NCBI GenBank assembly: GCA_002269645.1
Contig: NIVC01001296.1
Coordinates: 62,001 to 126,000, forward strand
Source of the DNA: Macrostomum lignano
Taxonomy: Eukaryota
DNA length: 64,000 bases
Direction of reading: 5' to 3'
Position 1 is the first letter of the stretch, and each line of letters starts with the position of its first letter. The notes beneath the pieces were generated by a model. It searched no databases. It worked only from the letters and a program-made list of their open reading frames with translations, and had not been told where the DNA came from. The translations under genes and the position numbers were made by a program. Of this stretch, positions 10,498 to 54,234 are shown piece after piece.

Positions 10498-13400
10498 GGT
10501 GGCTGGTTGCCTGACAGCTTGAGCATGCATAATAATTAATATATAGGCTATTTAGAAGCAAAGACAAAGATATGCTTTATTTTTCTGAATTAAAAAATTA
10601 GAAGGATAAAAAGACACTTTATAAAAATTGTCTTTTTAAAGTAAAAATATTTACAAGCTTATGGCTTCTTAGACCTTGAAAATGGTGTTTTAAATCTACT
10701 ATCATTTTCATCGATTCTGGTTAAATTCAGATTTGTTTACAAATTTAAAAAATATCAATTTGACCTAAAATCATTAGAGCTAAATAAAAAAGTTAACCAT
10801 ATCATTTGATTCAAAATCTTTCCTTCCTATATACTAAAACTTTAAACAGCTTGAAACCAATACACTAGATTTTGGCATGTGTCTGATAATCGAAAATTAC
10901 CTTACAGAGTATAATTTAAAGGGCTAAAGTTGCAATATACAATCCTGTAAATGACCTGATAAGTTGAGTCTATTTTTGCACATTCAAAGTTTATTAGTCA
11001 ACTCTGATTTGATTCGTGCAATAGTATTAGTTAGTTTACCAATTATATGATAATTTTATAATTTACTAACAAAAACATCAATTTATATGCTAGAACCTAC
11101 AAAAAGATGCTATGTCGAAATACAAATATGAATATAGTCTAAAAAGCTCTAGTCTAATATTTTTTTAATTAAGAAGTGAAATAATTATATGCACAATAAT
11201 GTAATATACAAATATTTTGGCAGCTTTTTCCTAGTTTAAAAGTACCCAGTTTCCTAGTTTCTCCTAGTACTTCAAAAGTAGGAAGTGGGAAGGCAAGATG
11301 GATACCATACATTTAGTTCTTCAAATACGCTCGTATATAGCTCGTTCTCGTTCAATGTTTCACTTGATTATTTTATATTGAAGCCCAAAAGGGACTCAAA
11401 TGAATCTTACTAATCTTTCAAAAGTTATATATTCGCAGCATATACGAAGCATGTTAAATAATTTGTAGTTATTATTTCGTAGGTTCAATTTTTTATTGTA
11501 CTGTAGATACTCCTGTTGTCAACAGAAACTAGCAAAAAAATTATTTTTCTCACTGAAGCTTTTATTATTAGTCTTTATTTGTTTATTTATTTTTCTTTTA
11601 CAAAACCTATAAAGATGCTTTGTTGCAAGATCAATGAGTTTTGTTATATCGTTTAAATTTTTATAAAAAGAAAACCGTGAAAGTGCAAGCAAGAGTTGTT
11701 GTTAATATTTATCGAGATAGAAAATCTATGCATGTTTTAAATTGCTTTTTTCAGCTGTGAGATCAGCGAGACAGTCAGGTTGCTTGTTGATCGACTGCTC
11801 GATTCTCTGCCTTGCATCTTTTATTGGACTTATTTGCATTGTACATGTACGAGTATAACGTTCAGCTGTACAGCTACACGTACGTCACGGACTACTAGAT
11901 ATTTGGGGGATGAGGACCTAATGAGGGCTTATTCATTGAAGGCAACATCTTTTTCTGTCAAAAAATGATTAGAAAAGTTTCTAAGTACGGGGTAAAAGTT
12001 CTATATTTTAAATCTGATTGAAGACGAAAATTAGCTGGGAATCGTACCTGAATTCATTGTTGGATAATTGAGCGAGGTTTTTTCGATTTGTTGCATACAT
12101 ATATTTGACATGAATATTTTTTGTCACGTTCCAACTGGAACAAATTATTACTTTATTATCACACGCGATTAAAGAATATAAGCAAGAAATCAGGGGCACA
12201 GGGATCGAAGGGGGTTGGGGAATGTATATCCTCCCGAACAGCCTAAAAAATTTGAAGTATGTTATTCTAGTACAAGCATTTTCAATCCCTAGGGGCGTCC
12301 TATCCCCCGAGAGGAAAATTTCTGGTGGCCTAGCTAAATCCCCCAGAAGAATTAAGATTTCTGGCTACGCGCCAGCTGCAAGGATCTAGTTGATAGCTTG
12401 CTATAAATTTGAGTTTGAGTTGAATTAAGCCGCTTTATTGATCGACATTCATAAAAACGAATTAGTACAACAAGCAGAACATCAAAAGCGAAAAGCGTAA
12501 TATAGAAAAATTTAGTGGACACAGCTGCAGCACATTAAAACAAGTTTACAGATTTAGGAAAACAAAATGCCTAATTTCCAAAAGCGATGAAGCCTGCTTT
12601 GTGCGACACATGTACAGTTATTGCGTCTGCAGATATGATTCGAAAAGCTGTGGAAAAATCATTTTGAATGAATTTTACGGCTCATATTTATTCACAACGA
12701 TTATCAAAAAGCAATTAGCTATTTTGTAATGAAATGAGCTAAAATTAAAAAGGAGCATTGTGCAACACCAATTGCAGTAGAATAAGAAATAGGTTAAATT
12801 TTCCAACGAACATTTATAGTAATAAATAATATAAACAACAGATGATGCACGGCCGCATATACAGTGTATAAATTAACGTATTGAACAAAAATAACGAAAA
12901 TGTTTGTATTGAATTGGAATTGGCAGAAGAGCAATCTGGAACCAACAACTTTACCTATAAATACAAATAGTTTTATTCAGAATTTAGAATAAGAAACTTG
13001 CTTTGATTCAATTACGAGAAAATTATATTGAGTTATAACAAATTAAAACTGACTTTTGAATGTTTTTTCGGCTTTAATGTGTTAAGCGAATCTATTTGAA
13101 TGACTAAACACTTATGTGGCGGCAAATAAAAAATAACCATTATTCATTGATCAGTACCTTGATGATTATTATTCATTAAAACACGTTTTTTATGTTTTAT
13201 ACCTATTTTTTAGATGGGGTAAAAATGGCGAAATTTATTGGCATAAAAACTTTGTGACATTTCCTTTGCGATGATACAATTTAGCTGTTTGTGCCCTTGG
13301 TCTACGATGTACATCATTCTCTATGTACAAAGCTGGCTTGCTTGCGTACATTTAACTGATGGCAGCCCACTCTCTCCATCCACCCAATGTACGAGAGTGG

Positions 13401-26568: not shown

Positions 26569-27262
26569 CGGGTCACTGAGTGTGGGTCATGGTTCAGAGC
26601 TGGTGTCTGCCCTGACTCACATGGGTCACTGAGTGTGGGTCATGGGTCAGAGCTGGTGTCTGCCCTGACTCAGATGGGTCACTGAGTGTAGGTCATGGGT
26701 CAGAGCTGGTGTCTGCCCTGACTCAGATGGGTCACTGAGTGTAGGTCATGGGTCAGAGCTGGTGTCTGCCCTGACTCAGATGGGTCACTGAGTGTGGGTC
26801 AGAGCTGGTGTCTGCCCTGACTCAGATGGGTCACTGAGTGTGGGTCAGAGCTGGTGTCTGCCCTGACTCAGATGGGTCACTGAGTGTGAGTCATGAGTCA
26901 GAGCTAGTGTCTGCCCTGACTCAGATGGGTCACTGAGTGTGGGTCATGGGTCAGAGCTGGTGTCTGCCCTGACTCAGATGGGTCACTGAGTGTGGGTCAT
27001 GGGTCAGAGCTGGTGTCTGATCTGACTCAGATAGGTCACTGAGTGTAGGTCATGGGTCAGAGCTGGTGTCTGCCCTGACTCAGATGGGTCACTGAGTGTG
27101 GGTCATGGGTCAGAGCTGGTGTCTGATCTGACTCAGATGGGTCACTGAGTGTGGGTCAGAGCTGGTGTCTGTCCTGACTCAGATGGGTCACTGAGTGTAG
27201 GTCATGGGTCAGAGCTGGTGTCTGCCCTGACTCAGATAGGTCACTGAGTGTGGGTCATCTGG
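26569..27262 (-). repeat. Same 53/46-bp minisatellite in reverse orientation, right arm
   Basis: GGGTCACTGAGTGTGGGTCATGGGTCAGAGCTGGTGTCTGCCCTGACTCAGAT is the reverse complement of the left-arm unit. Confidence 0.92.
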
Positions 27263-28163
27263 TGTCTGCTCCAGATCACAGGTAGATCAGGTGGTTCACC
27301 GACGCAGACGGCCGCACCGGCAGCTCAAACGACAGCAATACTCATTCCAGCTTCACCGTCATCATTATTTTACAAGGGCACAATCCAATAAAAGCTGCAA
27401 TTTAAAAGTTGCTTTAAAATTTTGGCGTCGCCACAGTAAACTACGAGATTACGAAATGAGCCACAGCTTCCACCATAGATTTCCTGCAGCAATCTTTTAT
27501 TGCCTCTGGACCACCCGCTGGGGATACTGCAGGTTTAAGTTTATAGTGCTCACAGTCCAGTTTCTGCGGCTACTCAGGTAGGGCACGCACCCTGGCGGAA
27601 GCAGCCAGCTCTCAGACGAATTTTTGAAATCATTTTCCGCCTCTATAAGCTTGTTGTCTTCTTTTATTTCAAATTTTTAAGCCCCTTGCCCATCCCGTCT
27701 GAGACGAGTGTTTAATTGCCCTGAGCATCGAGCCTGATGGTCACGAATCACAGAACTCCAACCCCCCCCGTTCCATACTCCTCAGACTGGAGTTCTGCTG
27801 TTGCATCCTGCCGTGTCTGGCAACTGTGCCAGAACCCCCGCGCCGGCCCTTCTATAGAGGAAATTTGTGTATACATGTGGTTTTCTGTCTGCGCGTCTGC
27901 CAGTGTGTTCTATTTTCTTTTTTCTTGAATGTCAAGCAGACGGGGACACCATGGGAACGCGCTGATGGACATGTCACAATTAGCAATGCAGGTTAAGCGG
28001 AAGTGGCCGCGGTTAGTAGCACGCGGATTATCCTCTTCATCCAATTTTAAACTTTGTGAAGTTTAAGCTAAATAAATAGCATGTGACTTGTGTAGTGGCT
28101 CGCGTAGGAATTTTAATTGGAGAGGGTCGCAACCCAAAGGGGCGCCGATATTTGGTGTCTGGG

Positions 28164-28835
28164 TGGGCGCCCCTGTCTCTTGGTTGGTGCCCCTGTCTCT
28201 TTGGTGGGTGCCCCTGTCTCTTGGTTGGTGCCCCTGTCTCTTGGTTGGTGCCCCTGTCTCTTGGTTGGTGCCCCTGTCTCTTGGTTGGTGCCCCTGTCTC
28301 TTGGTGGGCGCCCCTGTCTCTTGGTGGGCGCCCCTGTCTCTTGGTTGGTGCCCCTGTCTCTTGGTGGGTGCCCCTGTCTCTTGGTTGGTGCCCCTGTCTC
28401 TTTGGTGGGTGCCCCTGTCTCTTGGTTGGTGCCCCTGTCTCTTTGGTGGGTGCCCCTGTCTCTTGGTTGGTGCCCCTGTCTCTTGGTTGGTGCCCCTGTC
28501 TCTTGGTTGGTGCCCCTGTCTCTTGGTGGGCGCCCCTGTCTCTTTGGTGGGCGCCCCTGTCTCTTGGTGGGCGCCCCTGTCTCTTGGTTGGTGCCCCTGT
28601 CTCTTGGTGGGCGCCCCTGTCTCTTGGTTGGTGCCCCTGTCTCTTTGGTGGGTGCCCCTGTCTCTTGGTTGGTGCCCCTGTCTCTTGGTTGGTGCCCCCT
28701 GTCTCTTTGGTGGGTGCCCCTGTCTCTTGGTTGGTGCCCCTGTCTCTTGGTTGGTGCCCCTGTCTCTTGGTTGGTGCCCCTGTCTCTTGGTTGGTGCCCC
28801 TGTCTCTTGGTGGGTGCCCCTGTCTCTTTGGTGGC
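28164..28835. repeat. 20/21-bp minisatellite (GTGCCCCTGTCTCTTGGTTG)n
   Basis: Periodicity seen directly; explains five overlapping ORFs. Confidence 0.95.
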
Positions 28836-29426: not shown

Positions 29427-29871
29427 CACAGATACTAAAATAACTACTTTAGGGTAGATGGGCCACTCAGCAAATTTGCGTGTAAGCTACTTTCAGTTCA
29501 GTAGTAAGTTAAACCGAAGCATTTTAATGTATTTTTAAAACCAAGGCTCATTTATTGGCTCTTGCCCGGTTGCCCCCGACTTCTAACTTCCAACTTCTAA
29601 ACCCTCCAATAATCACGCCCTTCCTCACTACCCCGCCCCGCCCCGGAGTCACATCACAAGCTCGAAAAGGGTTAGGCTTAGGTTAGGGCTAGGGTTAGGG
29701 TTAGGGTTTGTGCCTTTTCGAGCTTGTGATGGAGCCCTGTTTCGACGATGTGATTTTTCGAGCTTATGATGGCGGACCCATGTATTCTTCTTTGCTACTG
29801 AACTGAAAGTAGAAAGCTGTTTTACTAAGTATATGCCTGAGTGGCCCATCTAGTCATTTTAGTAATCCGTG
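29427..29871 (+). mobile_element. Non-autonomous TIR element (MITE) with CAC...GTG termini, copy 1
   Basis: Imperfect TIRs: CACAGATACTAAAA...TAGATGGGCCACTCAG...CTACTTTCAGTTCAGTAG and CTACTGAACTGAAAGTAG...CTGAGTGGCCCATCTA...TTTTAGTAATCCGTG. Internal TTAGGG-like run. No clear TSD. Confidence 0.75.
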
Positions 29872-30589: not shown

Positions 30590-30902
30590 GATAATAATAA
30601 TACGAGTAATAACTGAATGCACCTACCCCAATGGGCAGATGTGCAACCGACAGCTCAGCCGCAGCTATTGCGCGGCGCATCTGAAGGCCGCCTACTGCTG
30701 TTCAGTCCAAGGACTGGGGGGTCGCCACACACCCTCAATTACCCCAGCTAATGCTGGCACCCATTTTACAGCTGGGTGAACTGAAGCAATGCAGAGTTAA
30801 GTGTCTTGCTCAAGGATACAAAGTGTTCCGAGTGAGATCGGGAATCGAACCCTCGACCTTCAAGTCGTGAGTCCGACGCTCTGACCACTAGGCTACAACC
30901 CC
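30590..30902 (-). mobile_element. tRNA-derived SINE with a CORE-like central domain
   Basis: Minus strand: A box TAGCCTAGTGG, B box GGTTCGATTCCC, then CCTTGAGCAAGACACTTAACTC...CAGCTGTAAAATGGG resembling the MIR/CORE consensus. (ATT)n-like tail near 30590-30612; the 3' limit is approximate. Confidence 0.75.
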
Positions 30903-31023
30903 TGTTGACTATTAACTAATAAATGTTCATAATTACTGATAGGTAAGGTATAGTGTACAGAATATTTTGCACTATTTTTTATAAAAAATCGTCACCGAGA
31001 CAAAGATTGCCTCCCACTCTCCT

Positions 31024-31279
31024 ATGCTGCCTCCTTTTGAAGAGATGCAGCCCTCAGAGGACCAGAAGAAAAGCATCGCAGCAGCTGCAAAGATAGCCGA
31101 AGAGCTGATGGCCAAGCTCGTGCCGTGGATAACCGAGCGAAAGGAGGTCGTCAGTCGGCTAAAAGAGATCGCGGACGAGATTGACAAGATTGAGAAGGAT
31201 GTGAATATTTCCAAGACTGTGGGCACATCAGTGTCCATCTTGGGTGGAGTGGCATCCATTGCGGCCATTGTTGCTACAG
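31024..31279 (+). CDS. ApoL-like exon 1 (start could be Met1 or Met8)
   Basis: Donor ACAG|GTGATG, phase 1. Confidence 0.8.
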
Positions 31280-34200
31280 GTGATGGGGAACACTTTATTA
31301 TATCGATTCTGTTTTCCAGTCCACGGCCTCTGCTTCCAGGGTTGCTCAGTCATCTTGTTCCCCTTTCCTCTCTGCTCTATCCTACTATTTCTGTCATACT
31401 CCCTCCTCTTTTTAGTATCTCTCTCCATAATCCTTACCTTAGCCTCACCCACAGATACTAAAATGCCTAGAGGGGCCACTCAGGCATATTAAGGCATAGG
31501 CATAGTACTCGTAAAACAGCTTTCTACTTTCAGTTCAGTAGCAAATAAGAATCCGTAAGTTATTTTATAAAAATAAAGGCAGCTGAAATGAATTTGATAA
31601 GTTTAGAAGGCCACAAGCTTGCAGGCGTAAACAACTTGCTAACTGGTTCAGCAATAATGTACATTAGCCAGTCCACTGAGATGTACATGGCAGCTTTAGG
31701 CTGGAATTCCGAGAAAGGCAATAAAAATTTGGGGGTGGGTAGTGAGGGAAAGGCGCGTTGGAAGCTTTAAGCTGGGGGGGGGTAAAAATAAATGAAGTAT
31801 TGGCTTTAAAAATACATTAAAATGCTTCTGTTTAACTCACGTTACTACTGAACTGAAAGTAGCTTACATGCAAATGTGCTGAGTAGCCCCATCTATTGTA
31901 GTTATTCTAGTATCGGTGGCCTCAGATTAAATTATAACGGAGCTTACCTTAAAGGTTCGATCTTTGTCCACAGCCCAGGTTCGAACTTAGCTTAGTTTAA
32001 GCTAGATTAAGCCTGGCCTAATAGTCTAGCGCGTCGGACTAACGACAGGAAGGTCGAGAGTTCTGGTTCCGCCAACATCCCGAAGGTACTTACTTACTTC
32101 CAAAACTTTAGGGATGACATTCTGCTCACTGTCTCGCGGAGAATGAGTACGATCCTTCATGAATGATTATAGAAATCTTGTATTCTTCAATCTCAATTAT
32201 TGAATTCGATCCCACGCACAGGTGGCCTCGCCGCCCCGCTAATCGCAGGAAGCGTGGCCGTTGCCGGCGCCGCAACCTCGGGCGGCGCCTCCATCACCGG
32301 AGATTTGCTGTCCAACAATAAGATGAAGCAGGCCCAGGCAGCCATGGACCAGGACAAGAGGTCCGTCGGTGAGATTGAGACGCTGCATCGGAAGCTGGAC
32401 GCTCGAGCAGTCCAACTGTCTAAACAGTTCAACGTGGAACCAGAAGCAGTTACCGGCCTATTCCTTATGTCCAGCATGGGCGGCAGGCAGCCTTACTCTG
32501 GCATGCTCGGCAACTTGCTTCCATTGACTCTTGCCTGCAGTACCATCATTACTGTGCGCACAGTTCTCACGACGACAGTCAGAACTACCGGCAAAGGCAT
32601 AACAAAGGCTGTCGGGCAAGTGTCCACGAAGGCTCTGACACGCACTGTGGGCTCGGTTCTGGGAGCAGCCGTGGCGTCGGCACTTATTGTTTGGGACGTG
32701 GTTGAGCTGGTGAAAACGGCCAAAGATATGAAAGGAGGATCCAAGTTGAGGCAGATCGCTACCGAACTGGAGAGCGAGGTGCACAGCCTTGAAGCTCAGC
32801 TAGAAGAGGCTCGGTAAGTTGTTTCTCATAGTTGACTGCAGGGCCTCCAGTCCAATGATATAGTGTTACTAGTGTGGTCCAAGGCCAGGATGGGTCCCAG
32901 GTGAATCCGGAGAATATTTGTTGAAATTCTTGGGTTAGTGGGACTCTTTTAGTGTGAAGAAAGAGGTAGTGAGAGACGGAGAGAAAGAGAGAGGTAGTGA
33001 CAGACGGAGAGAAAGAGAGAGGTAGTGACAGGCGGAGAGAAAGAGAGAGGTAGTGACAGACGGAGAGAAAGAGAGAGGTAGTGACAGACGGAGAGAAAGA
33101 GAGAGGTAGTGACAGACGGAGAGAAAGAGAGAGGTAGTGACAGGCGGAGAGAAAGAGAGAGGTAGTGACAGGCGGAGAGAAAGAGAGAGGTAGTGACAGG
33201 CGGAGAGAAAGAGAGAGGTAGTGACAGGCGGAGAGAAAGAGAGAGGTAGTGACAGACGGAGAGAAAGAGAGAGGTAGTGACAGACGGAGAGAAAGAGAGA
33301 GGTAGTGACAGTCGGAGAGAAAGAGAGAGGTAGGGAGAGCCGGAGAGAGACGAGGGGGGAGATAGAGGGAGAGACGCATCCCACCTTCACTTTGTGCGAA
33401 GGCTGAGGAAAGAGCATCAAAATAGGCAGACGATGAACTGCCAGATGGGCGCTGCGATGGTATTGTTGAGTGCTGATTTTCAGTACTCGTGTTTTTCAAA
33501 ATGCATGAATGGGGAGGAACTCCAATCTAATTAATCACTACGAGTTTGAATGAAAAATTTCTACAGAGAATAGTCTCGTTGATTTAATTTACTTCCATCC
33601 ATTCGGTGTCAATAAATTAAGTAGCAGTAGTGTACTTGTTAAGGTAAAGCAGGGTAGCTGACTTTGCTGTGCTGTTGCAGAACTTGCTCCACAATCTGAT
33701 CTGCAGTGCACTTAAATTGAGTTTTTGCGTTGCACTGGCGCCGCATCAAGAACACTGTATTCCTATAGAGGTGAGCATTCCAATCTTAAAAAAATTTCTT
33801 ACAAAAGTCTTCTATGTACTTAAACCCCAAACCACAACGATGCCTCTTTCTGTTTGGAGTGAAACGGCGTTGAGAAGCTCAGGACCCTTAGTGAGCAATG
33901 TTTCGCTTTGCTCGTTAAACTTTTTTCAATTCGTCATCGCGCCAAAAATGCATTTCCTTAACCTAAGCTCTAAACCAAACCTTAACTCAATCCTCAACTC
34001 AATCTAACCCTATCCTAAACCTAAGCCCAAACCCTTACTTAAACCCTAACCTTAATCTAAGCCCCAGCCCTAACCTATACAAAGTAGAGTTTTTTTGGCG
34101 CGAATTTGAATTAAAAACACTCGTAGTGACGAACGCAAGGAAAAGAACGCCCCATAGTGCAATCTATAACTTTCATGAGAAAAAACCCCTAGGTCACGTG

Positions 34201-35134
34201 CGCGTGTGGGTAGGCTCAAGAGTGCAGCGAGTGGCTTGGACGGATGGAACACGTGAGGAAATTGTTTGAGACGCTGTCGAAAATTGGTGAGAAGCGCAGA
34301 GCTAGCTCGGAAGATGCCCGAGACGCGCAGCAGGCTCTGGAGCAGCTCACTGATGAGACTTGGCGTCTCACCTTTCTCCAATACGTTCCCCAGATGAAAG
34401 ATCGGGTGGAGTTTACCTCTAGGCTTGCGAGGCTGTACCAGCTGTTCTCACGCAAGATTCCAGCCGAGCCGCCGAGCAACGTGACTGTCACGATTCTTTC
34501 CCACGGCGGAATTGACCCACGCCTGCAGCTTCCAGTTGGCTTCCACTTTCCCATCGGTATTTCAAGCATTACAAGGGGAGAGCTGCAGAAAATCGCCCTC
34601 TACTCGCCCTGGGGCTGCAGCATCAATGCTTCCGTGACGTGCGGTATCATAACAGACACGCTCAGCATGCGCAATGTGCAGTTTGACAGGCCAGTGTATG
34701 CATTCAATGCTGTCCAAGGGCACAGGGAGGCTCGCCCCAGCGGATGGAACGAGCTGCATCGGTCGAGCGGTGGCATGATTCCGAGCGTAACCTTTACACC
34801 CCTGCAACTGTCCGACCAAGCGGTTGTCTCCCTGCGGGAAATGCTGAATGTCAGAATGCCAGAATTTGACTCCGTTGTGGTTCCCTACTTCACCTTCGGC
34901 GACAACGCGTGGCCATTTCCGACGGTGACGCTTTTTGAGGTCAGCGTCATGCTCAACTTGCTTGGCTTTTTTCGAAACATGCGGATCAGCCTTCAAGTGG
35001 CCTGCTGCCTGGACTGGCCTGGCAGAGATGAAGTGGTACCATGTGAGCAGTATTACGTAACCGGGACAAACACGATGCGCAATCGGAATGCTCCGGGTGG
35101 CGGAAGGTTTCACCATCTGGACGGCTTTCTGTGA
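31024..35134 (+). CDS. Apolipoprotein L-like protein with a C-terminal unassigned ILSHGG/VACC domain, about 608 aa (predicted 4 exons)
   Basis: Exons 31024-31279, 32222-32813, 33402-33459, 34214-35134 with phases 1/2/0, totalling 1827 nt. ApoL-type segment LKEIADEIDKIEKDVNISKTVGTSVSILGGVASIAAIVATG|GLAAPLIAGSVAVAGAATSGGASIT and ALIVWDVVELVKTAKDM. The link between exon 2 and exon 4 is inferred. Confidence 0.75.
31450..31918 (-). mobile_element. Non-autonomous TIR element, copy 2 (same family as 29427-29871, opposite orientation), in ApoL-like intron 1
   Basis: CACAGATACTAAAATGCCTAGAGGGGCCACTCAGG ... CTGAGTAGCCCCATCTATTGTAGTTATTCTAGTATCGGTG. Confidence 0.72.
32010..32080 (+). mobile_element. 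Degenerate tRNA-SINE head
   Basis: GGCCTAATAGTCTAGCGCGTCGGACTAACGACAGGAAGGTCGAGAGTTC resembles the head of the SINE at 30902. Confidence 0.4.
32222..32813 (+). CDS. ApoL-like exon 2
   Basis: Acceptor CCCACGCACAG|GT; donor CG|GTAAGT (an in-frame TAA follows if unspliced). Confidence 0.85.
32960..33345. repeat. 28-bp purine-rich minisatellite (GGAGAGAAAGAGAGAGGTAGTGACAGAC)n in ApoL-like intron 2
   Basis: Periodicity seen directly. Confidence 0.93.
33402..33459 (+). CDS. Putative 58-nt bridging exon 3
   Basis: Acceptor CCCACCTTCACTTTGTGCGAAG|, donor ATG|GTATTG; converts phase 2 to phase 0, as needed to join exon 4. Confidence 0.5.
34214..35134 (+). CDS. Exon 4: helical linker plus unassigned globular domain (TILSHGG, ALYSPWGC, WNEL, IPSV, VVPY, LQVACCL)
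   Basis: 307-codon open frame with exon-like codon usage, starting after TGGGTAG|. Confidence 0.75.
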   Translation, partial: AQECSEWLGRMEHVRKLFETLSKIGEKRRASSEDARDAQQALEQLTDETWRLTFLQYVPQMKDRVEFTSRLARLYQLFSRKIPAEPPSNVTVTILSHGGIDPRLQLPVGFHFPIGISSITRGELQKIALYSPWGCSINASVTCGIITDTLSMRNVQFDRPVYAFNAVQGHREARPSGWNELHRSSGGMIPSVTFTPLQLSDQAVVSLREMLNVRMPEFDSVVVPYFTFGDNAWPFPTVTLFEVSVMLNLLGFFRNMRISLQVACCLDWPGRDEVVPCEQYYVTGTNTMRNRNAPGGGRFHHLDGFL

Positions 35135-35584
35135 CGGTCGGGCTGCTAGACTGTCGCTGGGCTGTATGCCAGTAACGTGCATGTTTTGCAACTTCGGGTC
35201 TAACTCTAAATCGTAACCAAAAGAAATTTAGCTGCAGCCCTAAATCTGAAGTGTCAACCCCTCACCTTTTTCTGTAATGAATAGAAAGCTTGAGTGCATT
35301 AAAACTACTGAAATGTGCGCACGATAAAACGAGCGTAAAAGCCTCCGTACTGATGGTGGAGTATGTAGCAGAACGAAGAGAGAGGCAAGCATAGGCAGGC
35401 AGTCAATCAGCTTTATTTAGTGAATCGCAAGGAGTGGTGAGCATGAACAAAGATAAATGTACTTTGGGTCACGCAAAGACAACGAAAGAGAGAAAAAGGA
35501 GAGGAAGTGAGGGAGGGATTGAGAGGGCGAGATGTGGATGAGATAAAAATATTGACAGACATATAGGGAGGAGAGACAGATAGA

Positions 35585-38085
35585 GAGAGAGGAGGGGGAG
35601 GAACAGAGAGGAGGGGGAGGAACAGAGAGGAGGGGGAGGAACAGAGAGGAGGGGAGGAACAGAGAGGAGGGGGAGGAACAGAGAGGAGGGGAGGAACAGA
35701 GAGGAGGGGAGGAACAGAGAGGAGGGGAGGAACAGAGAGGAGGGGAGGAACAGAGAGGAGGGGAGGAACAGAGAGGAGGGAGAGGAACAGAGAGGAGGGA
35801 GGAACAGAGAGGAGGGGAGGAACAGAGAGGAGGGGAGGAACAGAGAGGAGGGGGAGGAACAGAGAGGAGGGGAGGAACAGAGAGGAGGGGGAACAGAGAG
35901 GAGGGGGAGGAACAGAGAGGAGGGGAGGAACAGAGAGGAGGGGAGGAACAGAGAGGAGGGGGAACAGAGGGGAGGAGGAGGAACAGAGAGGAGGGGGAGG
36001 AACAGAGAGGAGGGGAGGAACAGAGAGGAGGGAGGAACAGAGAGGAGGGGAGGAACAGAGAGGAGGGGAGGAACAGAGAGGAGGGGAGGAACAGAGAGGA
36101 GGGGGAGGAACAGAGAGGAGGGGGAGGAACAGAGAGGAGGGGAGGAACAGAGAGGAGGGGAGGAACAGAGAGGAGGGGAGGAACAGAGAGGAGGGGAGGA
36201 ACAGAGAGGAGGGGAGGAACAGAGAGGAGGGGAAACAGAGGGGAGGAGGAGGAACAGAGAGGAGGGGGAGGAACAGAGAGGAGGGGGAGGAACAGAGAGG
36301 AGGGGAGGAACAGAGAGGAGGGGGAGGAACAGAGAGGAGGGGAGGAACAGAGAGGAGGGGAAGGAACAGAGAGGAGGGGAGGAAGAGAGAGGAGGGGAGG
36401 AACAGAGAGGAGGGGAGGAACAGAGAGGAGGGGGAGGAACAGAGAGGAGGGGGAGGAACAGAGAGGAGGGGAGGAACAGAGAGGAGGGGGAACAGAGAGG
36501 AGGGGGAGGAACAGAGAGGAGGGGGAACAGAGGGGAGGAGGAGGAACAGAGAGGAGGGGAGGAACAGAGAGGAGGGGGAGGAACAGAGAGGAGGGAGGAA
36601 CAGAGAGGAGGGGGAACAGAGGGGAGGAGGAGGAACAGAGAGGAGGGGAGGAACAGAGAGGAGGGGAGGAACAGAGAGGAGGGAGGAACAGAGAGGAGGG
36701 GAGGAACAGAGAGGAGGGGGGAACAGAGGGGAGGAGGAGGAACAGAGAGGAGGGGGAGGAACAGAGAGGAGGGGAGGAACAGAGAGGAGGGGAGGAACAG
36801 AGAGGAGGGGAGGAACAGAGAGGAGGGGAGGAACAGAGAGGAGGGGGAGGAACAGAGAGGAGGGGAGGAACAGAGAGAAGGGGAGGAACAGAGAGGAGGG
36901 GAGGAACAGAGAGGAGGGGAGGAACAGAGAGGAGGGGAGGAACAGAGAGGAGGGGGAACAGAGGGGAGGAGGAGGAACAGAGAGGAGGGGGAGGAACAGA
37001 GAGGAGGGGGAGGAACAGAGAGGAGGGGAGGAACAGAGAGGAGGAGGAACAGAGAGGAGGGGGAGGAACAGAGAGGAGGGAGGAACAGAGAGGAGGGGGA
37101 GGAACAGAGAGGAGGGAGGAACAGAGAGGAGGGGGAACAGAGGGGAGGGGAGGAACAGAAAGGAGGGGGGAACAGAGAGGAGGGGAGGAACAGAGAGGAG
37201 GGGAGGAACAGAGAGGAGGGGAGGAACAGAGAGGAGGGGGAACAGAGGGGAGGAGGAGGAACAGAGAGGAGGGGAGGAACAGAGAGGAGGGGAGGAACAG
37301 AGAGGAGGGGAGGAACAGAGAGGAGGGGAGGAACAGAGAGGAGGGGAGGAACAGAGAGGAGGGGGAGGAACAGAGAGGAGGGGAGGAACAGAGAGGAGGG
37401 GGAGGAACAGAGAGGAGGGGAGGAACAGAGAGGAGGGGGAGGAACAGAGAGGAGGGGAGGAACAGAGAGGAGGGGGGAACAGAGGGGAGGAGGAGGAACA
37501 GAGAGGAGGGGGAGGAACAGAGAGGAGGGGAGGAACAGAGAGGAGGGGAGGAACAGAGAGGAGGAGGAACAGAGAGGAGGGGGAGGAACAGAGAGGAGGG
37601 GAGGAACAGAGAGGAGGGGAGGAACAGAAAGGAGGGGAGGAACAGAGAGGAGGGGGGAACAGAGGGGAGGGGGAGGAACAGAAAGGAGGGGGGAACAGAG
37701 GGGAGGAGGAGGAACAGAGAGGAGGGGGAGGAACAGAGAGGAGGGGAGGAACAGAGAGGAGGAGGAACAGAGAGGAGGGGAGGAACAGAGAGGAGGGAGG
37801 AACAGAGAGGAGGGGGAACAGAGGGGAGGGGAGGAACAGAAAGGAGGGGGGAACAGAGGGAGGGGAGGAACAGAGAGGAGGGGAGGAACAGAGAGGAGGG
37901 GAGGAACAGAGAGGAGGAGGAACAGAGAGGAGGGGAGGAACAGAGAGGAGGGGAGGAACAGAGAGGAGGGGGAACAGAGAGGAGGGGGAACAGAGGGAGG
38001 GGGAACAGAAAGGAGGGGGGAACAGAGGGGAGGAGGAGGAACAGAGAGGAGGGGGAGGAACAGAGAGGAGGGGAGAGGCAGAGAG
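35585..38085. repeat. 2.5-kb purine-rich minisatellite, 17-20-bp variants of GAGGAACAGAGAGGAGGG(G)
   Basis: Seen directly; gives three stop-free ~900-aa pseudo-ORFs on the minus strand. Confidence 0.97.
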
Positions 38086-39881
38086 AAGACGGGGAGAGAC
38101 ACAGAAGAGACATGATGAGGGAGAGAGCAAACAGAGAGAAGCAGAATCTGGTGGGCAGTTCACAGATAACAGCGTATACTTAGCTGGAGTTAAACTTTAA
38201 CCAAACATTAAAACATGGCTTTTCTGTTTTCTAACAACTTGCCCAGCACTTGACCAAACGCTGCATGATTCTAACCCCTAGCCTTCTCACTAAACCCTAA
38301 CACTACCTTAAGGTTGAACTCTAACGAGAAGCCGTCATTTGCTACCTGAAATTATCTTATGCATATGCTTTAATACCTCCACGCCTCATTGGTATAATTC
38401 TCAGCTGCCGTAATTCCTTAGTAGTGACTTTCACTAATACTGTCATTCAGACCTCATTGAAATAAACTGTGATCAACTGTGCGAAATTTTACCTGTAATT
38501 TTTTGCATTACAGGAGAACTACTAAGGGGGGAATTCCCCTGACAATTTTCCCAGCACCGGAGCAACGCAGGCAAAAATCTGACATAGTTGCAAATCTCCA
38601 AACTCACTTGGTGCCGCCTGTTGAAGGTCCCGACGGCGTCGTGGTGATGGCTGAATGCTTGAGAGACCAGCTGAGGATGTCCAGCAGTTGAGGCAATTGC
38701 CACTGTCGTCGAGGCTTGATTAGCGAAACTAAAGAAATTCGTAACAGGGTTTCCATATTCACATGGACGTGCCACCTGTTGAAGGTCCAGAAGCTCCGCC
38801 TGGGTAAAAACCAGTGACCAACGAAGTCAGAGCTGACGCAGACACATGCGGTCGACGTGCTGATGAAATTTGAAGGCTTGGCAAGGCTGCACTGAGGTGC
38901 AGTGCTGATTGGCGCACAGGGGTTGTACTGAATACACTGGCGCTTATGGGAAAAATCCGACCTTCTGGCAGAATAGTCGAATATCTCGTCGGTCCAGAGG
39001 GCTGGCGACTTGATTTTTGTTTGAGAAGGTGCGCAAAAGAAGCTGGCCCGTGCTCTTGAATTTCGTGTGCCTGCGTTGCTCCGTTCCGGCGCAGCAAAAA
39101 AAAATTTTCCACCCATTGGTAGTTCGACGGGCGGAAAAAATGGCTTTGCATTCCTACTGTTAAAGAGAAAAACAAACTGATAAGATGGCAAAGGTAATTT
39201 TTTAGCAAATTGCGAGCTAGCATAGGGAATTATAAACAGTAATTTGGCCTTATGCTGCTGCGGTGCTGATGTGTCATTTTTTTGCGGCGACACGCCGTCG
39301 CAACGATTGTTCCTTGACATGACCTGACAGATTTTCGCCTATATATCAATAGAACTAGCATAAAAGCGTCCGTGTATCAGTTTTATTCGTAGAGTATTAT
39401 ATGTTTCCTGCCTTTTTAACAAAACATTTCGATAACAGTATAACGTCGCACACAGTAAATGTAGCTTAGTCGTTTAAATGTACTTTCTTGCGCAACCAAA
39501 TATACATGTATATTTATGGCTTGTTATCACTTATTGCATTTGATAACCAACTAATCGCCACTTATGTCTCAATGACAGAAAAGATAGTTCCCGGGTTCGA
39601 AACCTTGTGCACCACACGAATTTGAGGTTGTCACTGAGAAGCAACTTGGGCCGTTCCTGCAGCATATTCCGATGTGGGTCAACCCTAACCGCGCAGTATA
39701 CACGTTTCTCATTGTCTGCTCAGTGATATCTGTGTACCGTATCGGTGTGTACTGCACGTGTGCGTGTGCTCATGAAAGATGGAGGAATAGCTCGTAGGCA
39801 CACTAGACCATTCTGCTGATTTATACAGGACACCAAAGTTGTTGTATATCAAGGTGGGAAACTGTTTCTGAGGTAAGATTA

Positions 39882-41769
39882 TCTCCTAATACTAAAACTG
39901 ACGCGATGTTTGTCTGTCTGTATGTCTGTCTGTCTGTATGTAGCAAGTGAACTCCTACAATTCTGCCAAGTCAACGTCGAAACTTATATGGGAAAACTGC
40001 AAATTTTCCGGAGCAGGCTTTAGGCTATTTTAATTTTTAATTTTCACATTTTAACATCCCTAAAAAAGCAGAAAACTGCTTTTTTAACCCCCAATAACCT
40101 TCTTTGGTCACTCTGCCTGGGGCTTCAGCCAGTTTGTAAAAATAGCCACCCCAACCTCCGCCCGCGGGCCGCTGTGTATTGAGGGGTGGTGGGTGCGCGT
40201 GTTCTGCGTTCAATGCAAATAAAACCCCCGCGTGTTGGGGGGTCGAGTTCAATTTAATGCTTCCCCCAGAACGGGGGTTGGGCTTGGGCTGAGTGTACAT
40301 AGCAGTTGTACAGTGTAAATAGATAGACTGTGTCGAAATTCATTTGGTTTTATTATCGGCGCCTTTTTTCTCCATAGGCAGCCAGCCCTGTGTATTAGCT
40401 TGGCAGTGAAATTCAATGAATTGCGACTGCGAGCTTCTCTAGCAAGCAGTCGGGAAATCGGTAAATTTCAAACGCTAACTGTTCCTCGAGTTTTAAACTT
40501 TGAGAGGAGAGACTTATATTGCTGGAAAGATCTTGCAACGCTGAGTTTGGGGATATAAGTTGTTTGCTTTATATATGAAAAGAAAAAGCACAGCATTTGA
40601 AAAACTATTTTCATACTTTTAACTTTCTGCAAAGATTGTACTTAGTTTTGCGAGACGTAATAGATAAAGTTGGGGGAGGGTTCAACTTCTCACTGCTGCT
40701 GTGTATTGGAGGGTTGATTTAGATTGCGCAACTGTTTATTTAACTTTAAATAAGACTGATACTGTCTGACTGAGAAATGGTTTGCGCAATTAATTGATTC
40801 AATTAATTCAACACGCAGCTCTGTGCAGCTCGAACCCTAACCCTAACCAATGAATTCTGAAAGTTAAGTTCTTTTTGACAGAGAAAATTTCGATTGAGTC
40901 CAGTTTCACGGAGTATTCTGATGGTTTTCGGTTTCACGGAGAGGATTTATTTTTCGTGGAGAGAATTTAGATGTATTTCTGTTTTACGGAGACGATTTTG
41001 ATGGATGTCAGTTTCACTCAGAGGATTTCCATGGAGCCCAGTTTCACGGAGAGGATTTCTGTTTCGCGGAGAGGATTTCTGTTTCGCGGAGAGGATTTCT
41101 GTTTCACGGAGGGATTTTGATGGATTTGGTATCTTCAGTCAGTCAGTAAAGAGAGTAAAGAGAAGAGTGAAAAGAGAAGAGAGAAGAGATTATAGAAAAG
41201 AGAGTAGAGATGAGAGAGGACAGATTAGACATGACAGATGGGAGAGAAGAGGGGAGTAAGGCGGGAACGAAGAGGGAGAGAGAAGAAAAGAGGAGAGAGG
41301 AGATGAGAGGGAATATATGAGATAGCAGAGGGAGACAGGAGAGATGAGAGGAGAGAGAAGAGAGGAGCTGAGAGTAGAGGAGAAAGAAATAGTGAGATGA
41401 GGCATGAGGGATGAGAGATGAGAGAGGAGAGAAGAGAGGAGAGAGGAGAGAGGAGAAAACAGGGGATAAAGGAGACAGAAGAGAAAGACGAAAGACGAGG
41501 GAGAAGAGATAAATAAGGTGGTAGAGATGAGAGACGTGAGAGGAGAGAAAAGAGAAGAGAGGAGACAGAAGAATCTGAGTCTGGACAATGGCAGTCAGTT
41601 TTTGCGAACAGGGAAAACAAGATATGGTATTTGAAAGGCTTTACAGAGGATTTGGAGATGATTTGGAAGATGGGATTCAAGTCATGGAATTTCAGCTGAT
41701 GGATTTCAGGGAATGGAATTCCGGTGATGGGAGTTCTTCCCCTTTCTCCTCCAGAGGAGGAGTTGGCCT
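39882..41769 (+). mobile_element. Helitron-like non-autonomous element, family 1, unit U1
   Basis: A|TC start (TCTCCTAATACTAAAACTG) followed by (GTCT)n; 3' hairpin CTCCTCC-AGA-GGAGGAG at 41746-41762. Confidence 0.72.
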
Positions 41770-53881: not shown

Positions 53882-54234
53882 TAGGTCTATAAAAATAGAT
53901 TTTTGGATGGATAAAAATAAGTTTTGCATTGACTTCTAACGCCCAGAAAAATGTTTGTCATAATCTTTTAGTGCTTTCTAAGAAGCTCTATTTCGGCTCG
54001 TATCCAAAATTTTGAACTCCCAGCAGCCAATTTTGCTGACTCTGTTGACACCAGGATCTTGGATTGCCACTGGATGTCTTCTGCCATTTGTTTTTAATAC
54101 CTATGGATGACGCTTTCACGGTAAAACATGTGGAACTTCGAGAAAAACGGGTACTTTCAAATGATATTGGTGTCCAAAGAAGCATATCCGGTGTATTGTA
54201 CTGTCCATTTACTTGTACTTGTCCGGTGTACTAT

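What the first reader, a model, noticed from the sequence alone, without database searches (positions are those of the whole stretch)
31024..35134. Apolipoprotein L-like pore-forming module apparently fused to a His/Cys-dyad domain: candidate single-chain immune effector
Seen: exons 1-2 encode an ApoL-type amphipathic helix, a long Gly/Ala-rich hydrophobic hairpin and a C-terminal hydrophobic helix. A strong CG|GTAAGT donor and a 58-nt exon join it in frame to a 307-codon exon with VTILSHGG (His at 34502) and LQVACCL (Cys at 35003), 167 residues apart. Known: ApoL proteins are innate-immunity membrane permeabilisers, and clan CD proteases such as caspases use (I/L)LSHG and (I/Q)AC motifs, though with much shorter spacing. 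Inference: the domain may be a divergent caspase-fold or Stv-like peptidase that self-processes or gates the ApoL module, analogous to gasdermin-protease pairs. I recall uncharacterised teleost ApoL-fusion proteins with similar HG / LYSPW / ACL motifs but cannot verify this here. Reading through the donor gives a TAA, so an ApoL-only short isoform is also possible.
Basis: partly seen in the sequence, partly recalled or inferred. Interest (0 to 1): 0.72.

Follow-up and report, generated by a model that had tools for sequence, protein, structure and literature searches.

The report
Flatworm ApoL gene with unnamed His/Cys domain
A flatworm gene that encodes an apolipoprotein-L-type membrane-permeabilising module is followed on the same strand by one large exon encoding a conserved, unnamed domain with invariant histidine and cysteines; the same two-part protein occurs in clams, crayfish and many fishes and has never been studied.

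Summary
The window is Macrostomum lignano contig NIVC01001296.1. The 58-nt bridging exon has no support and is not needed. The donor at 32813 joined to the CAG acceptor at 34225-34227 gives an open 584-aa fusion with no sequence change. This model aligns end to end with a 586-aa transcript-encoded homologue (E 8e-105). The intron before the C-terminal exon splits an Arg/Glu codon in phase 2 at the matching place in a bivalve and a teleost. In crayfish, ApoL and the C-terminal domain are one continuous genomic exon. GenBank instead ends the protein at an in-frame TAG (34211-34213) through a non-canonical GT..TG join, so whether this locus makes the fusion is unresolved. The C-terminal module is a four-helix bundle plus an alpha/beta core. 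It has 58 relatives, and every one whose source could be named is an animal. H87, G88, P122, W123, C125, N169 and C255 are near-invariant. It has no Pfam, PDB or Foldseek assignment, only sub-threshold hits to the bacterial Stv domain. A caspase fold is not shown. Catalytic function is inference.

The parts
30980..30987 (+). TATAAAAA, a possible TATA box 37 nt upstream of the first ATG (low confidence)
   Evidence: Read from the sequence; no functional test.
31024..31279 (+). Coding exon 1: N-terminal amphipathic helix and the first half of the Gly/Ala-rich hydrophobic hairpin. GenBank and the homologue alignment favour the second ATG at 31045 as the start.
   Evidence: Ends in phase 1 (ACAG|gtgatg) inside the first Gly of GGLAAP, the same codon and phase as in Mya arenaria and Procambarus clarkii.
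31280..32221 (+). Intron 1 (GTGATG...CACAG); holds a tRNA-related repeat fragment.
32222..32813 (+). Coding exon 2: the rest of the ApoL domain, two further hydrophobic segments and the C-terminal coiled coil LRQIATELESEVHSLEAQLEEA-R. Ends in phase 2 within the Arg codon.
   Evidence: Donor GCTCG|GTAAGT fits the M. lignano GT[G/A]AG motif.
32814..34227 (+). Intron 2 in my model (GTAAGT...GTGCAG). Mostly repeats: a 28-mer x14 array at 32957-33348 and telomere-like CCCTAA-type repeats around 33970-34060.
   Evidence: Phase-2 intron at the matching place before the C-terminal exon in Mya arenaria and Cheilinus undulatus.
34207..34213 (+). T GGG TAG: the last 7 nt of the GenBank CDS (protein ...EEARG*). 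The TAG at 34211-34213 is in frame with the downstream domain. The implied acceptor dinucleotide is TG (non-canonical).
   Evidence: CDS range 31045-34213; 277 aa = exon 1 + exon 2 + 7 nt.
34228..35134 (+). Coding exon 3 in my model: the whole C-terminal module and the TGA stop. An internal ATG at 34244 would start a 296-aa stand-alone product.
34244..34459 (+). Predicted four-helix bundle (residues 1-72 of the 296-aa ORF).
   Evidence: AlphaFold2 model, pLDDT 82-94 in this part; helices 2-17, 22-35, 38-51, 54-71.
34460..35098 (+). Predicted alpha/beta core (residues 73-285): mixed beta-sheet with flanking helices.
   Evidence: pLDDT 84 and 83, pTM 0.86 and 0.83.
34502..34507 (+). Invariant His87-Gly88, directly after strand 79-85.
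   Evidence: H in 55/56 and G in 56/56 homologues; invariant in A1.
34607..34618 (+). Pro122-Trp123-Gly-Cys125; the Cys sits just before helix 129-136.
   Evidence: P 57/57, W 57/57, C 56/57. Lies inside the stretch that matches Pfam Stv in teleost members.
34745..34750 (+). Trp168-Asn169, conserved pair.
   Evidence: W 51/57, N 55/57.
35000..35011 (+). Ala253-Cys254-Cys255-Leu256, at the end of strand 247-253. C255 is the invariant Cys.
   Evidence: C255 55/56, L256 55/55, position 254 = Ala in 43/56.
35298..35303 (+). ATTAAA, a possible polyadenylation signal 164 nt after the stop.
   Evidence: sequence only.

Best explanation
This is one M. lignano gene of a conserved, uncharacterised animal family. 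In this family an apolipoprotein-L (ApoL) membrane-inserting module of about 280 aa continues through its C-terminal coiled coil into a module of about 300 aa. That second module is a four-helix bundle plus an alpha/beta core carrying near-invariant His-Gly, Tyr-x-Pro-Trp-x-Cys, Trp-Asn and Ala-Ala-Cys-Leu motifs.

The most likely coding structure has three exons: 31024 (or 31045)-31279, 32222-32813 and 34228-35134. They are joined by canonical GT..AG introns and give a 584-aa (or 577-aa) fusion.

Shown here: the ApoL identity, the existence and spread of the fused architecture, the conserved intron positions, the conserved residues and a confident structure model.

Inferred mechanism: the ApoL part targets and permeabilises a membrane, as characterised ApoL proteins do. 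The C-terminal part is a thiol-dependent (Cys/His) enzyme, probably a hydrolase. It would either act on a target reached through the ApoL module or control that module by cleavage. The His that pairs with a Cys is H87. C255 is equally conserved and may complete the site.
For: Identity of the locus:
- The window is 100% identical to GCA_002269645.1 NIVC01001296.1.
- Pfam ApoL scores above its cut-off.

Fused architecture elsewhere:
- phmmer of the 296-aa ORF against 1.84 billion representatives gives 58 hits. The best is P0004, E 1.2e-32, with the domain at residues 298-559 of 586.
- 17 hits are 500-700 aa with the domain at the C-terminus.
- Pfam finds ApoL in their N-terminal halves, in 12 of 70 members scanned.
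- Named examples are Mya arenaria XP_052786655.1, Procambarus clarkii XP_069193328.1, Amphiprion, Cheilinus, Megalops, Ctenopharyngodon, Scomber, Epinephelus and Boleophthalmus.
- P0004 is an uninterrupted ORF on a 2.9-kb Logan contig.
- In crayfish the ApoL end and the C-terminal domain are one genomic exon.

Gene structure:
- The intron before the C-terminal exon is phase 2 in the codon after LEQI (Mya, AAG|gtaaat...ttcag|G) and after LAAL (Cheilinus, TTGA|gtaagt...caacag|A). In M. lignano it is phase 2 in the codon after LEEA (GCTCG|gtaagt).
- Intron 1 is phase 1 in the same Gly codon in flatworm, clam and crayfish.
- The only canonical in-frame acceptor after the TAG is CAG at 34225-34227. 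It fits the species' CAG acceptor motif.
- The resulting 584-aa protein aligns with P0004 in one HSP across the junction: 36% identity over 589 columns, E 8e-105.

C-terminal domain:
- All invariant family residues are present in the window protein.
- Model confidence is pLDDT 84, pTM 0.86.
- Sub-threshold but consistently placed Pfam Stv hits (profile positions 2-78 of 121) start at the xxAHG strand in three teleost members, E 0.0095-0.051. One member of the trimmed alignment A1 reaches E 0.0015; its position was not reported.
- Stv is described as having a conserved His and Cys.
Against: - GenBank's transcript-derived model BOX15_Mlig024591g1 ends at the in-frame TAG 34211-34213, giving 277 aa ...EEARG*. 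The annotators' dominant transcript therefore did not use the 34228 acceptor.
- That model needs a GT..TG junction. It came from a pipeline that maps de novo transcripts at 80% identity or more and merges transcripts across repetitive gaps. It is weak evidence, but real.
- No protein containing this C-terminal ORF, fused or alone, is in the 5.8-billion-protein collection. I therefore have no transcript evidence for its translation in M. lignano.
- The acceptor at 34228 has no pyrimidine tract, and the linker it gives is 8 aa against 13 aa in homologues.
- For the mechanism: no known catalytic family or fold could be assigned.
- One His and two Cys could equally form a metal site.
Confidence: 0.5

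Rival explanations
1. Two products from one locus. The ApoL exons give an ApoL-only protein of 277 aa that stops at TAG 34211-34213, as GenBank annotates. The C-terminal domain is translated separately from ATG 34244 as a 296-aa protein. It would come from its own promoter, or from a spliced-leader trans-spliced mRNA using the same CAG acceptor at 34225-34227. The locus would then be a gene fission, or an operon-like pair, of an ancestrally fused gene.
For: - The GenBank CDS ends at 34213.
- Many homologues are stand-alone proteins of about 300 aa: P0005, P0006 and teleost LOC proteins.
- An ATG lies 16 nt after the candidate acceptor.
[quoted passage not shown] The only requirement is an unpaired acceptor.
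- A TATAA-like string lies at 34165-34169.
Against: - An upstream cis donor (32813) is present and strong, which favours cis-splicing.
- The intron position and phase are those of the fused genes in clam and fish.
- Residues encoded upstream of the ATG (EWLGR) continue the hydrophobic periodicity of the first helix seen in homologues.
- A start at M1 would shorten that helix by about 10 residues.
- The ORF is not annotated as a gene, and no such protein is on record.
Confidence: 0.3
2. The C-terminal exon is a recently disabled remnant. The ancestral fusion was interrupted at the exon boundary (in-frame TAG, displaced acceptor), the flatworm now makes only ApoL, and the downstream frame has not yet decayed.
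For: - An in-frame TAG lies two codons after the annotated junction.
- The AG at 34212-34213, nearest the matching acceptor position, is out of phase with the donor.
- There is no record of the protein.
Against: - The frame is open for 307 codons, where the flanks have about 20 stops per frame over the same length.
- Every invariant and near-invariant family residue is retained.
- A canonical in-frame acceptor exists 15 nt beyond the TAG.
Confidence: 0.1
3. Functional rival: the C-terminal module is not an enzyme. It would be a regulatory or sensor domain, either an autoinhibitor of the ApoL pore former released by another protease (as in gasdermins) or a ligand- or metal-binding switch. The conserved His and two Cys would serve as a zinc or redox site.
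For: - No catalytic family or fold was recognised in any library.
- Three conserved ligand-type residues (H87, C125, C255) fit a three-ligand metal site as well as a dyad.
- In one fish model the domain is repeated three times next to a calpain protease (P0019). That arrangement looks more like a substrate or payload than a protease, though this gene model is unverified.
Against: - The strand-His-Gly and strand-Cys-helix placements are typical of active sites at the C-terminal edge of a sheet.
- An invariant Asn and aromatic residues accompany them.
- There is a weak link to Stv, which its describers read as a His-Cys toxin or peptidase domain.
Confidence: 0.3
4. One reading: exon 2, a 58-nt exon, then an acceptor at 34213/34214.
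For: Seven frame-preserving AG..58 nt..GT candidates exist, more than mononucleotide shuffles give (mean 2.1).
Against: - None has both species-typical splice motifs.
- They lie in repeats or overlap one another.
- The final acceptor is the TAG stop itself, preceded by a G-rich tract.
- Homologues have a 13-aa linker. With a 58-nt exon it would be 32 aa with no similarity.
- A simpler canonical join exists.
Confidence: 0.03

Closest known systems
Apolipoprotein L family (Pfam PF05461; human APOL1-6)
   Same: The N-terminal 283 aa pass the Pfam gathering score. They show the amphipathic helix, a long Gly/Ala-rich hydrophobic hairpin, further hydrophobic helices and a C-terminal leucine-zipper-like coiled coil. 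No signal peptide is visible, so the protein looks intracellular, as most APOLs are (own knowledge).
   Different: Characterised ApoL proteins end after the coiled coil. Here, and in the relatives, about 300 further residues follow. Pore formation was not tested.
Uncharacterised ApoL-plus-C-terminal-domain proteins of other animals, e.g. Mya arenaria XP_052786655.1, Procambarus clarkii XP_069193328.1, Cheilinus undulatus XP_041634219.1, Amphiprion ocellaris XP_023142336.2, Megalops atlanticus KAG7454532.1
   Same: Same two modules in the same order, same length (583-637 aa), same invariant motifs and shared intron positions and phases.
   Different: In those species the fusion is annotated, or is a single exon. 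In M. lignano the annotation stops at a TAG before the second module, and the fusion depends on an unverified acceptor.
Stv domain (Pfam PF21527), a bacterial C-terminal domain found on Rhs-type and C80-associated polymorphic toxin architectures (bioRxiv 10.1101/2022.08.23.504947)
   Same: Described as a mixed beta-sheet flanked by helices, with a conserved His and Cys and no close structural neighbour. That matches the model here in general terms. Three to four teleost members hit the first two thirds of the profile, starting at the His-Gly strand.
   Different: All hits are below the gathering score (14.8-17.1 against 24.2 bits), and the window protein has none. The animal domain is about twice as long (about 210 against 121 positions) and has a second invariant Cys and a preceding helical bundle. 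Stv function is itself unproven.
Clan CD cysteine peptidases (caspases C14, C80 self-cleaving domains)
   Same: Same order of His then Cys. Hydrophobic strand-(S/A)HG and strand-A-C motifs resemble (I/L)LSHG and QAC. The H87-C125 spacing of 38 residues is near the caspase spacing (own knowledge).
   Different: No Pfam match. Foldseek shows caspase-6 and caspase-8 chains only at E 7.8, TM 0.21-0.31.
Gasdermin / protease pairs (pore former held inactive until cleaved)
   Same: A membrane-permeabilising module is linked to a second module that could hold a cysteine-dependent activity. This is an analogy of logic only.
   Different: No sequence or fold relation; the pore-forming family is different; no cleavage site or autoinhibition has been shown.

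Membership tests
Apolipoprotein L (PF05461) | Match to the family profile above the curated score | tested here: met
   49.1 bits against a 25.9 cut-off, E 6.8e-13; GenBank product P0001 also carries PF05461.
Apolipoprotein L (PF05461) | Hydrophobic helical hairpin(s) for membrane insertion, followed by a C-terminal coiled coil | tested here: met
   Kyte-Doolittle segments at 62-111, 177-205 and 223-253; heptad-like LRQIATELESEVHSLEAQLEEA at the end.
Apolipoprotein L (PF05461) | Ion-channel or membrane-permeabilising activity | not testable with these tools
   Needs liposome or bilayer assays.
Animal ApoL + C-terminal His/Cys-domain fusion proteins (unnamed) | C-terminal module homologous over its full length, with the invariant motifs | tested here: met
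   phmmer E 1.2e-32 to P0004 over residues 9-277; H87, G88, P122, W123, C125, N169, P180, C255, L256 and Y270 all present.
Animal ApoL + C-terminal His/Cys-domain fusion proteins (unnamed) | Both modules in one polypeptide | tested here: inconclusive
   A canonical GT..CAG join gives an open 584-aa frame collinear with P0004, and the intron position and phase are shared. But GenBank ends the CDS at TAG 34211-34213, and no transcript could be examined.
Caspase-like / clan CD peptidases | Profile match to Peptidase_C14, C13, C80 or a related family | tested here: not met
   No such family at E<=1 for the window protein or for 23 trimmed homologues, and none at E<=0.1 among the top 25 families listed for the 70 full-length members.
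Caspase-like / clan CD peptidases | Caspase-hemoglobinase fold | tested here: not met
   Foldseek against PDB with the full and core models found no match at E<0.1; caspase chains appear at E 7.8, TM 0.21-0.31. Foldseek may miss very divergent folds, so this is not an exclusion.
Caspase-like / clan CD peptidases | His and Cys adjacent in space at the C-terminal ends of neighbouring strands | not testable with these tools
   Model coordinates are not returned. Only the secondary-structure context is known: H87 after strand 79-85, C255 after strand 247-253, C125 before helix 129-136.
Stv domain (PF21527) | Profile match above the gathering score of 24.2 bits | tested here: not met
   No hit for the window protein at E<=1. 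Teleost members score 14.8-17.1 bits, E 0.0095-0.051. One trimmed member reaches E 0.0015.
Stv domain (PF21527) | Conserved His and Cys in the equivalent positions | tested here: inconclusive
   The matched stretch starts at IIFVAHG and includes PWNC, which suggests H87/C125. The HMM alignment itself is not shown by the tool, and no Stv sequences were fetched.

The most novel reading that the evidence does not exclude
An ancient two-module effector found across several animal phyla, in which the colicin-like ApoL pore former is hard-wired to a Cys/His enzyme domain of bacterial polymorphic-toxin ancestry (Stv-like). In M. lignano, the choice between two in-frame 3' junctions 21 nt apart (34207, which includes a TAG, and 34228, which skips it), or SL trans-splicing at the latter, would switch output between ApoL-only, domain-only and fused forms. 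This would be a splice-controlled arming of a cell-death or antimicrobial effector.
Probability: 0.12. Interest if true: 0.85.

Novelty: new variant of a known kind. Interest (0 to 1): 0.6.

Why it matters
ApoL proteins are innate-immunity membrane permeabilisers whose regulation is poorly understood. A conserved version exists in flatworms, molluscs, crustaceans and fishes that carries a second domain with catalytic-looking residues. That version would give a natural handle on how ApoL activity is controlled or extended.

It would also define a new protein domain family: no Pfam model, no solved relative and no Foldseek neighbour. I found no paper on it in the library searched. M. lignano has transgenesis and RNAi, so the question is testable in an animal.

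For genome annotation, about 300 conserved codons at this locus are currently not annotated as coding.

Tried and rejected
- The word-index homology search with the 296-aa ORF found nothing. An exact look-up of that ORF found nothing. The alignment-based repeat returned only 14 teleost and Logan proteins, all unnamed.
- PDB sequence searches with the protein and with the profile gave only chance hits, E>=0.08.
- Foldseek found nothing at E<0.1 with the full model against PDB (top hits FtsY NG domains, TM 0.12), the core model against PDB, or the core model against BFVD.
- NCBIfam and PADLOC found nothing.
Bacterial relatives therefore remain untested.
- Alternative acceptors were rejected. AG 34212-34213 and AG 34191-34192 are out of phase with the donor and run into TGA after about 20 codons (my reading). 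No AG|N GGN stop that would explain the GenBank ending exists before 41461, so the GenBank junction must be the non-canonical 34207.
- The seven 58-nt exon candidates were rejected.
- Weak Pfam hits of the helical parts (Rx_N, SesA, Fib_alpha, ATG17, Lebercilin) were treated as coiled-coil noise.
- Literature searches for ApoL fusions and for the locus tag found nothing relevant.
- No second copy of either module lies in the window.

Full report
Origin. The ApoL part matches GenBank protein 'hypothetical protein BOX15_Mlig024591g1 [Macrostomum lignano]' at 100% identity (P0001, 277 aa). The 23,169-bp stretch fetched around that gene (L001, from contig NIVC01001296.1 of GCA_002269645.1) is identical to window 21045-44213. 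The window is therefore flatworm nuclear DNA, rich in tandem repeats and retroelements.

Observation. The coordinates hold.
- Exon 1 (31024-31279) and exon 2 (32222-32813) translate to 283 aa and pass the Pfam ApoL threshold (49.1 against 25.9 bits).
- Hydropathy shows a 50-residue Gly/Ala-rich hydrophobic stretch (62-111) and two further hydrophobic segments (177-205, 223-253), ahead of a heptad-like C-terminal helix.
- The donor is GCTCG|GTAAGT, and read-through gives Arg then TAA.
- The frame 34214-35134 is open for 307 codons, while both other frames and the flanks are full of stops.
- His87 of the 296-aa ORF is at 34502, and Cys254 is at 35003.
- The 58-nt exon does not hold. Seven frame-keeping AG..58..GT segments exist. 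They lie in repeats or overlap, and none has both species-typical splice motifs. The 'acceptor' of the large exon is just the AG of the stop codon TAG (34211-34213) that opens the frame.

The C-terminal module has relatives, and many are fused to ApoL.
- The fast word-index search found nothing. A full phmmer scan of 1.84 billion representatives found 58 proteins at E<=1e-3.
- Seventeen of them are 500-700 aa with the match in the C-terminal half. Pfam finds ApoL in their N-terminal halves.
- Sources include the clam Mya arenaria, the crayfish Procambarus clarkii and at least nine teleost genera. All are labelled 'uncharacterized', once 'Apolipoprotein L3'.
- Others are stand-alone proteins of about 300 aa, mostly teleost. 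Two Prochilodus models carry three tandem copies, one of them followed by a calpain domain. Those models are unverified.

Is the fusion real elsewhere? Yes.
- P0004 (586 aa) is an uninterrupted ORF on a 2.9-kb Logan contig from run SRR23477409.
- In the crayfish genome, everything from GGLAAP to the stop, meaning the rest of ApoL plus the whole C-terminal module, is one exon.

Gene structure at this locus. Intron positions tie the M. lignano exons to the fused genes.
- Intron 1 interrupts the first Gly codon of GGLAAP in phase 1 in flatworm, clam and crayfish.
- The intron before the C-terminal exon is phase 2 in the codon straight after the ApoL coiled coil: LEEA-R in M. lignano, LEQI-R in Mya and LAAL-E in Cheilinus. 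In all three species the whole C-terminal module is one terminal exon.
- The donor at 32813 is therefore the ancestral donor into this exon.
- I enumerated canonical joins. From that donor, the only in-frame acceptor that comes after the TAG and keeps the start of the module is CAG at 34225-34227, with the exon starting at 34228. It matches the CAG motif reported for M. lignano acceptors (PMC8629364).
- The product is 584 aa. It aligns with P0004 in a single HSP through the junction: 36% identity, 589 columns, E 8e-105. P0004's Met1 aligns to the second ATG, 31045.

The conflict.
- GenBank's protein ends ...EEARG*. Its CDS range, 31045-34213, equals exon 1 plus exon 2 plus 7 nt, so the last piece is 34207-34213 (T GGG TAG). 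The annotated intron is therefore GT..TG.
- That TAG is in the same frame as the C-terminal ORF. In the annotators' transcript the two halves are collinear and in frame, and a single stop codon separates them.
- The annotation pipeline combined StringTie/TACO assemblies with de novo transcripts BLAT-mapped at 80% identity or more. It kept dominant isoforms only, used TransDecoder for CDS calling, and merged ORF-bearing transcripts with downstream ones across repetitive gaps of up to 10 kb (PMC5730564).
- The gap here is repetitive, so the odd junction may be an artefact. It could also be a real dominant isoform.
- I could not examine reads. No protein containing the C-terminal ORF is on record. 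My inference is that the pipeline assigned one CDS to this transcript, which would explain why the ORF is not annotated, but this absence gives no evidence on expression.
- My estimates: fusion made at this locus about 0.5; two separate products about 0.3; recently disabled remnant about 0.1.

What the C-terminal module is.
- AlphaFold2 with a 23-sequence alignment gives a confident model (pLDDT 84, pTM 0.86). It has a four-helix bundle (residues 2-71) followed by an alpha/beta core. The core alone folds the same way (pLDDT 83).
- Over 56-57 aligned homologues the near-invariant residues are H87-G88, Y120-x-P122-W123-x-C125, G134-I135, W168-N169, P180, A253-x-C255-L256 and Q269-Y270.
- H87 follows strand 79-85, C255 follows strand 247-253, and C125 precedes helix 129-136. 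These are positions typical of active sites at the C-terminal edge of a sheet.
- No library assigns the domain: Pfam, PDB sequences, Foldseek against PDB and BFVD, NCBIfam and PADLOC.
- Caspase-6 and caspase-8 large-subunit chains appear only at rank 48-49 (E 7.8, TM 0.21-0.31). That is not evidence for a caspase fold.
- The only recurring lead is Pfam Stv (PF21527). Three teleost members match profile positions 2-78 of 121 at E 0.0095-0.051, below the cut-off, and a trimmed member reaches E 0.0015. The located matches begin at the xxAHG strand and include PWxC.
- Stv is a C-terminal domain of bacterial Rhs-type and C80-associated architectures. Its describers report a conserved His and Cys, a mixed sheet flanked by helices and no close structural neighbour, and they suggest toxin or peptidase activity without a test.

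Mechanism (inference).
- ApoL proteins insert into and permeabilise membranes (established for human APOL1 and APOL3; own knowledge). The flatworm protein has the same elements and no signal peptide.
- The attached module keeps a His, two Cys and an Asn across several animal phyla. In a cytosolic protein this argues for chemistry (a thiol enzyme or a metal or redox site) rather than disulfides.
- I favour a Cys/His hydrolase that works with the ApoL module, either as a second effector activity or as its control.
- A non-catalytic regulator is a serious rival. Nothing here shows self-cleavage.

Comparison and novelty.
- The N-terminal half is an ordinary ApoL family member.
- The whole belongs to an existing but unnamed and unstudied protein family. 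Membership of the caspase family was tested and not met. Membership of Stv was tested, not met at threshold and left inconclusive.
- I found no paper on the fusion.
- I rate it a new variant of a known kind: an ApoL with an unrecognised conserved domain.

Limits. I had no read-level transcript data, no model coordinates, no AlphaFold DB search and no profile-profile search against Pfam or PDB. The organisms behind the Logan contigs are unknown.

Noticed in passing
window 34207-34228: The GenBank junction (34207) and the canonical CAG acceptor (exon start 34228) are 21 nt apart and in the same frame. The longer form includes the TAG and the shorter skips it. Alternative use of the two would switch between an ApoL-only protein and a fused protein.
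   Followed up: partly
window 30833-30902 (-), and about 32010-32080 in intron 1: A tRNA-like element passes the Rfam tRNA threshold (31.5 against 29 bits), but ARAGORN does not call it. A related fragment (gcgtcggact.acgac..gaaggtcgag.gttc) lies in intron 1. These are probably heads of a tRNA-derived SINE.
   Followed up: partly
window 35586-38075: A 2.5-kb purine-rich satellite, an 18-mer (AGAGAGGAGGGGAGGAAC) in about 139 copies, starts 450 nt after the gene's stop. GC skew reaches 0.82 and AT skew 1.0. Similar purine-rich skew continues to about 54 kb.
   Followed up: no
window 32957-33348; 28158-28828; 26570-27258: Further tandem arrays: a 28-mer x14 inside intron 2, a 20-mer x33 and a 53-mer x13. 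The 20-mer array produces long spurious ORFs in all frames.
   Followed up: no
window 29668-29708 and about 33970-34060: Interstitial telomere-like repeats: (AGGGTT)x7, and a degenerate CCCTAA/AACCCT run inside intron 2.
   Followed up: no
window 45-2522 (+): An 825-aa ORF with reverse transcriptase, RNase H, integrase zinc-binding and integrase core domains. It is a Ty3/gypsy-type LTR-retrotransposon pol fragment that runs off the window start.
   Followed up: partly
window 54064-56328 (+): A 754-aa ORF with an RVT_1 reverse transcriptase domain (E 2.5e-28) in a GC-rich block. Probably a non-LTR retroelement.
   Followed up: no
window 6387-8105 (-) and 9904-10530 (-): Large minus-strand ORFs with WD40 beta-propeller and long coiled-coil matches (EML/WDR-like, ATG16-like coiled coil). 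These are probably exons of an unrelated host gene upstream of the ApoL locus.
   Followed up: no
P0019 and P0030 (Prochilodus magdalenae models): Three tandem copies of the C-terminal domain in one predicted protein, in P0019 followed by a calpain (Peptidase_C2) domain. This could be a real multi-domain protein or a merge of neighbouring genes.
   Followed up: no
L003 (Mya arenaria CP111027.1) 37140-40469: The first coding exon of isoform X1 occurs twice, identically, 3.2 kb apart (37140-37217 and 40392-40469). A second family member of 268 aa (LOC128221991) sits on the same chromosome. This suggests local duplication of the family in the clam.
   Followed up: no
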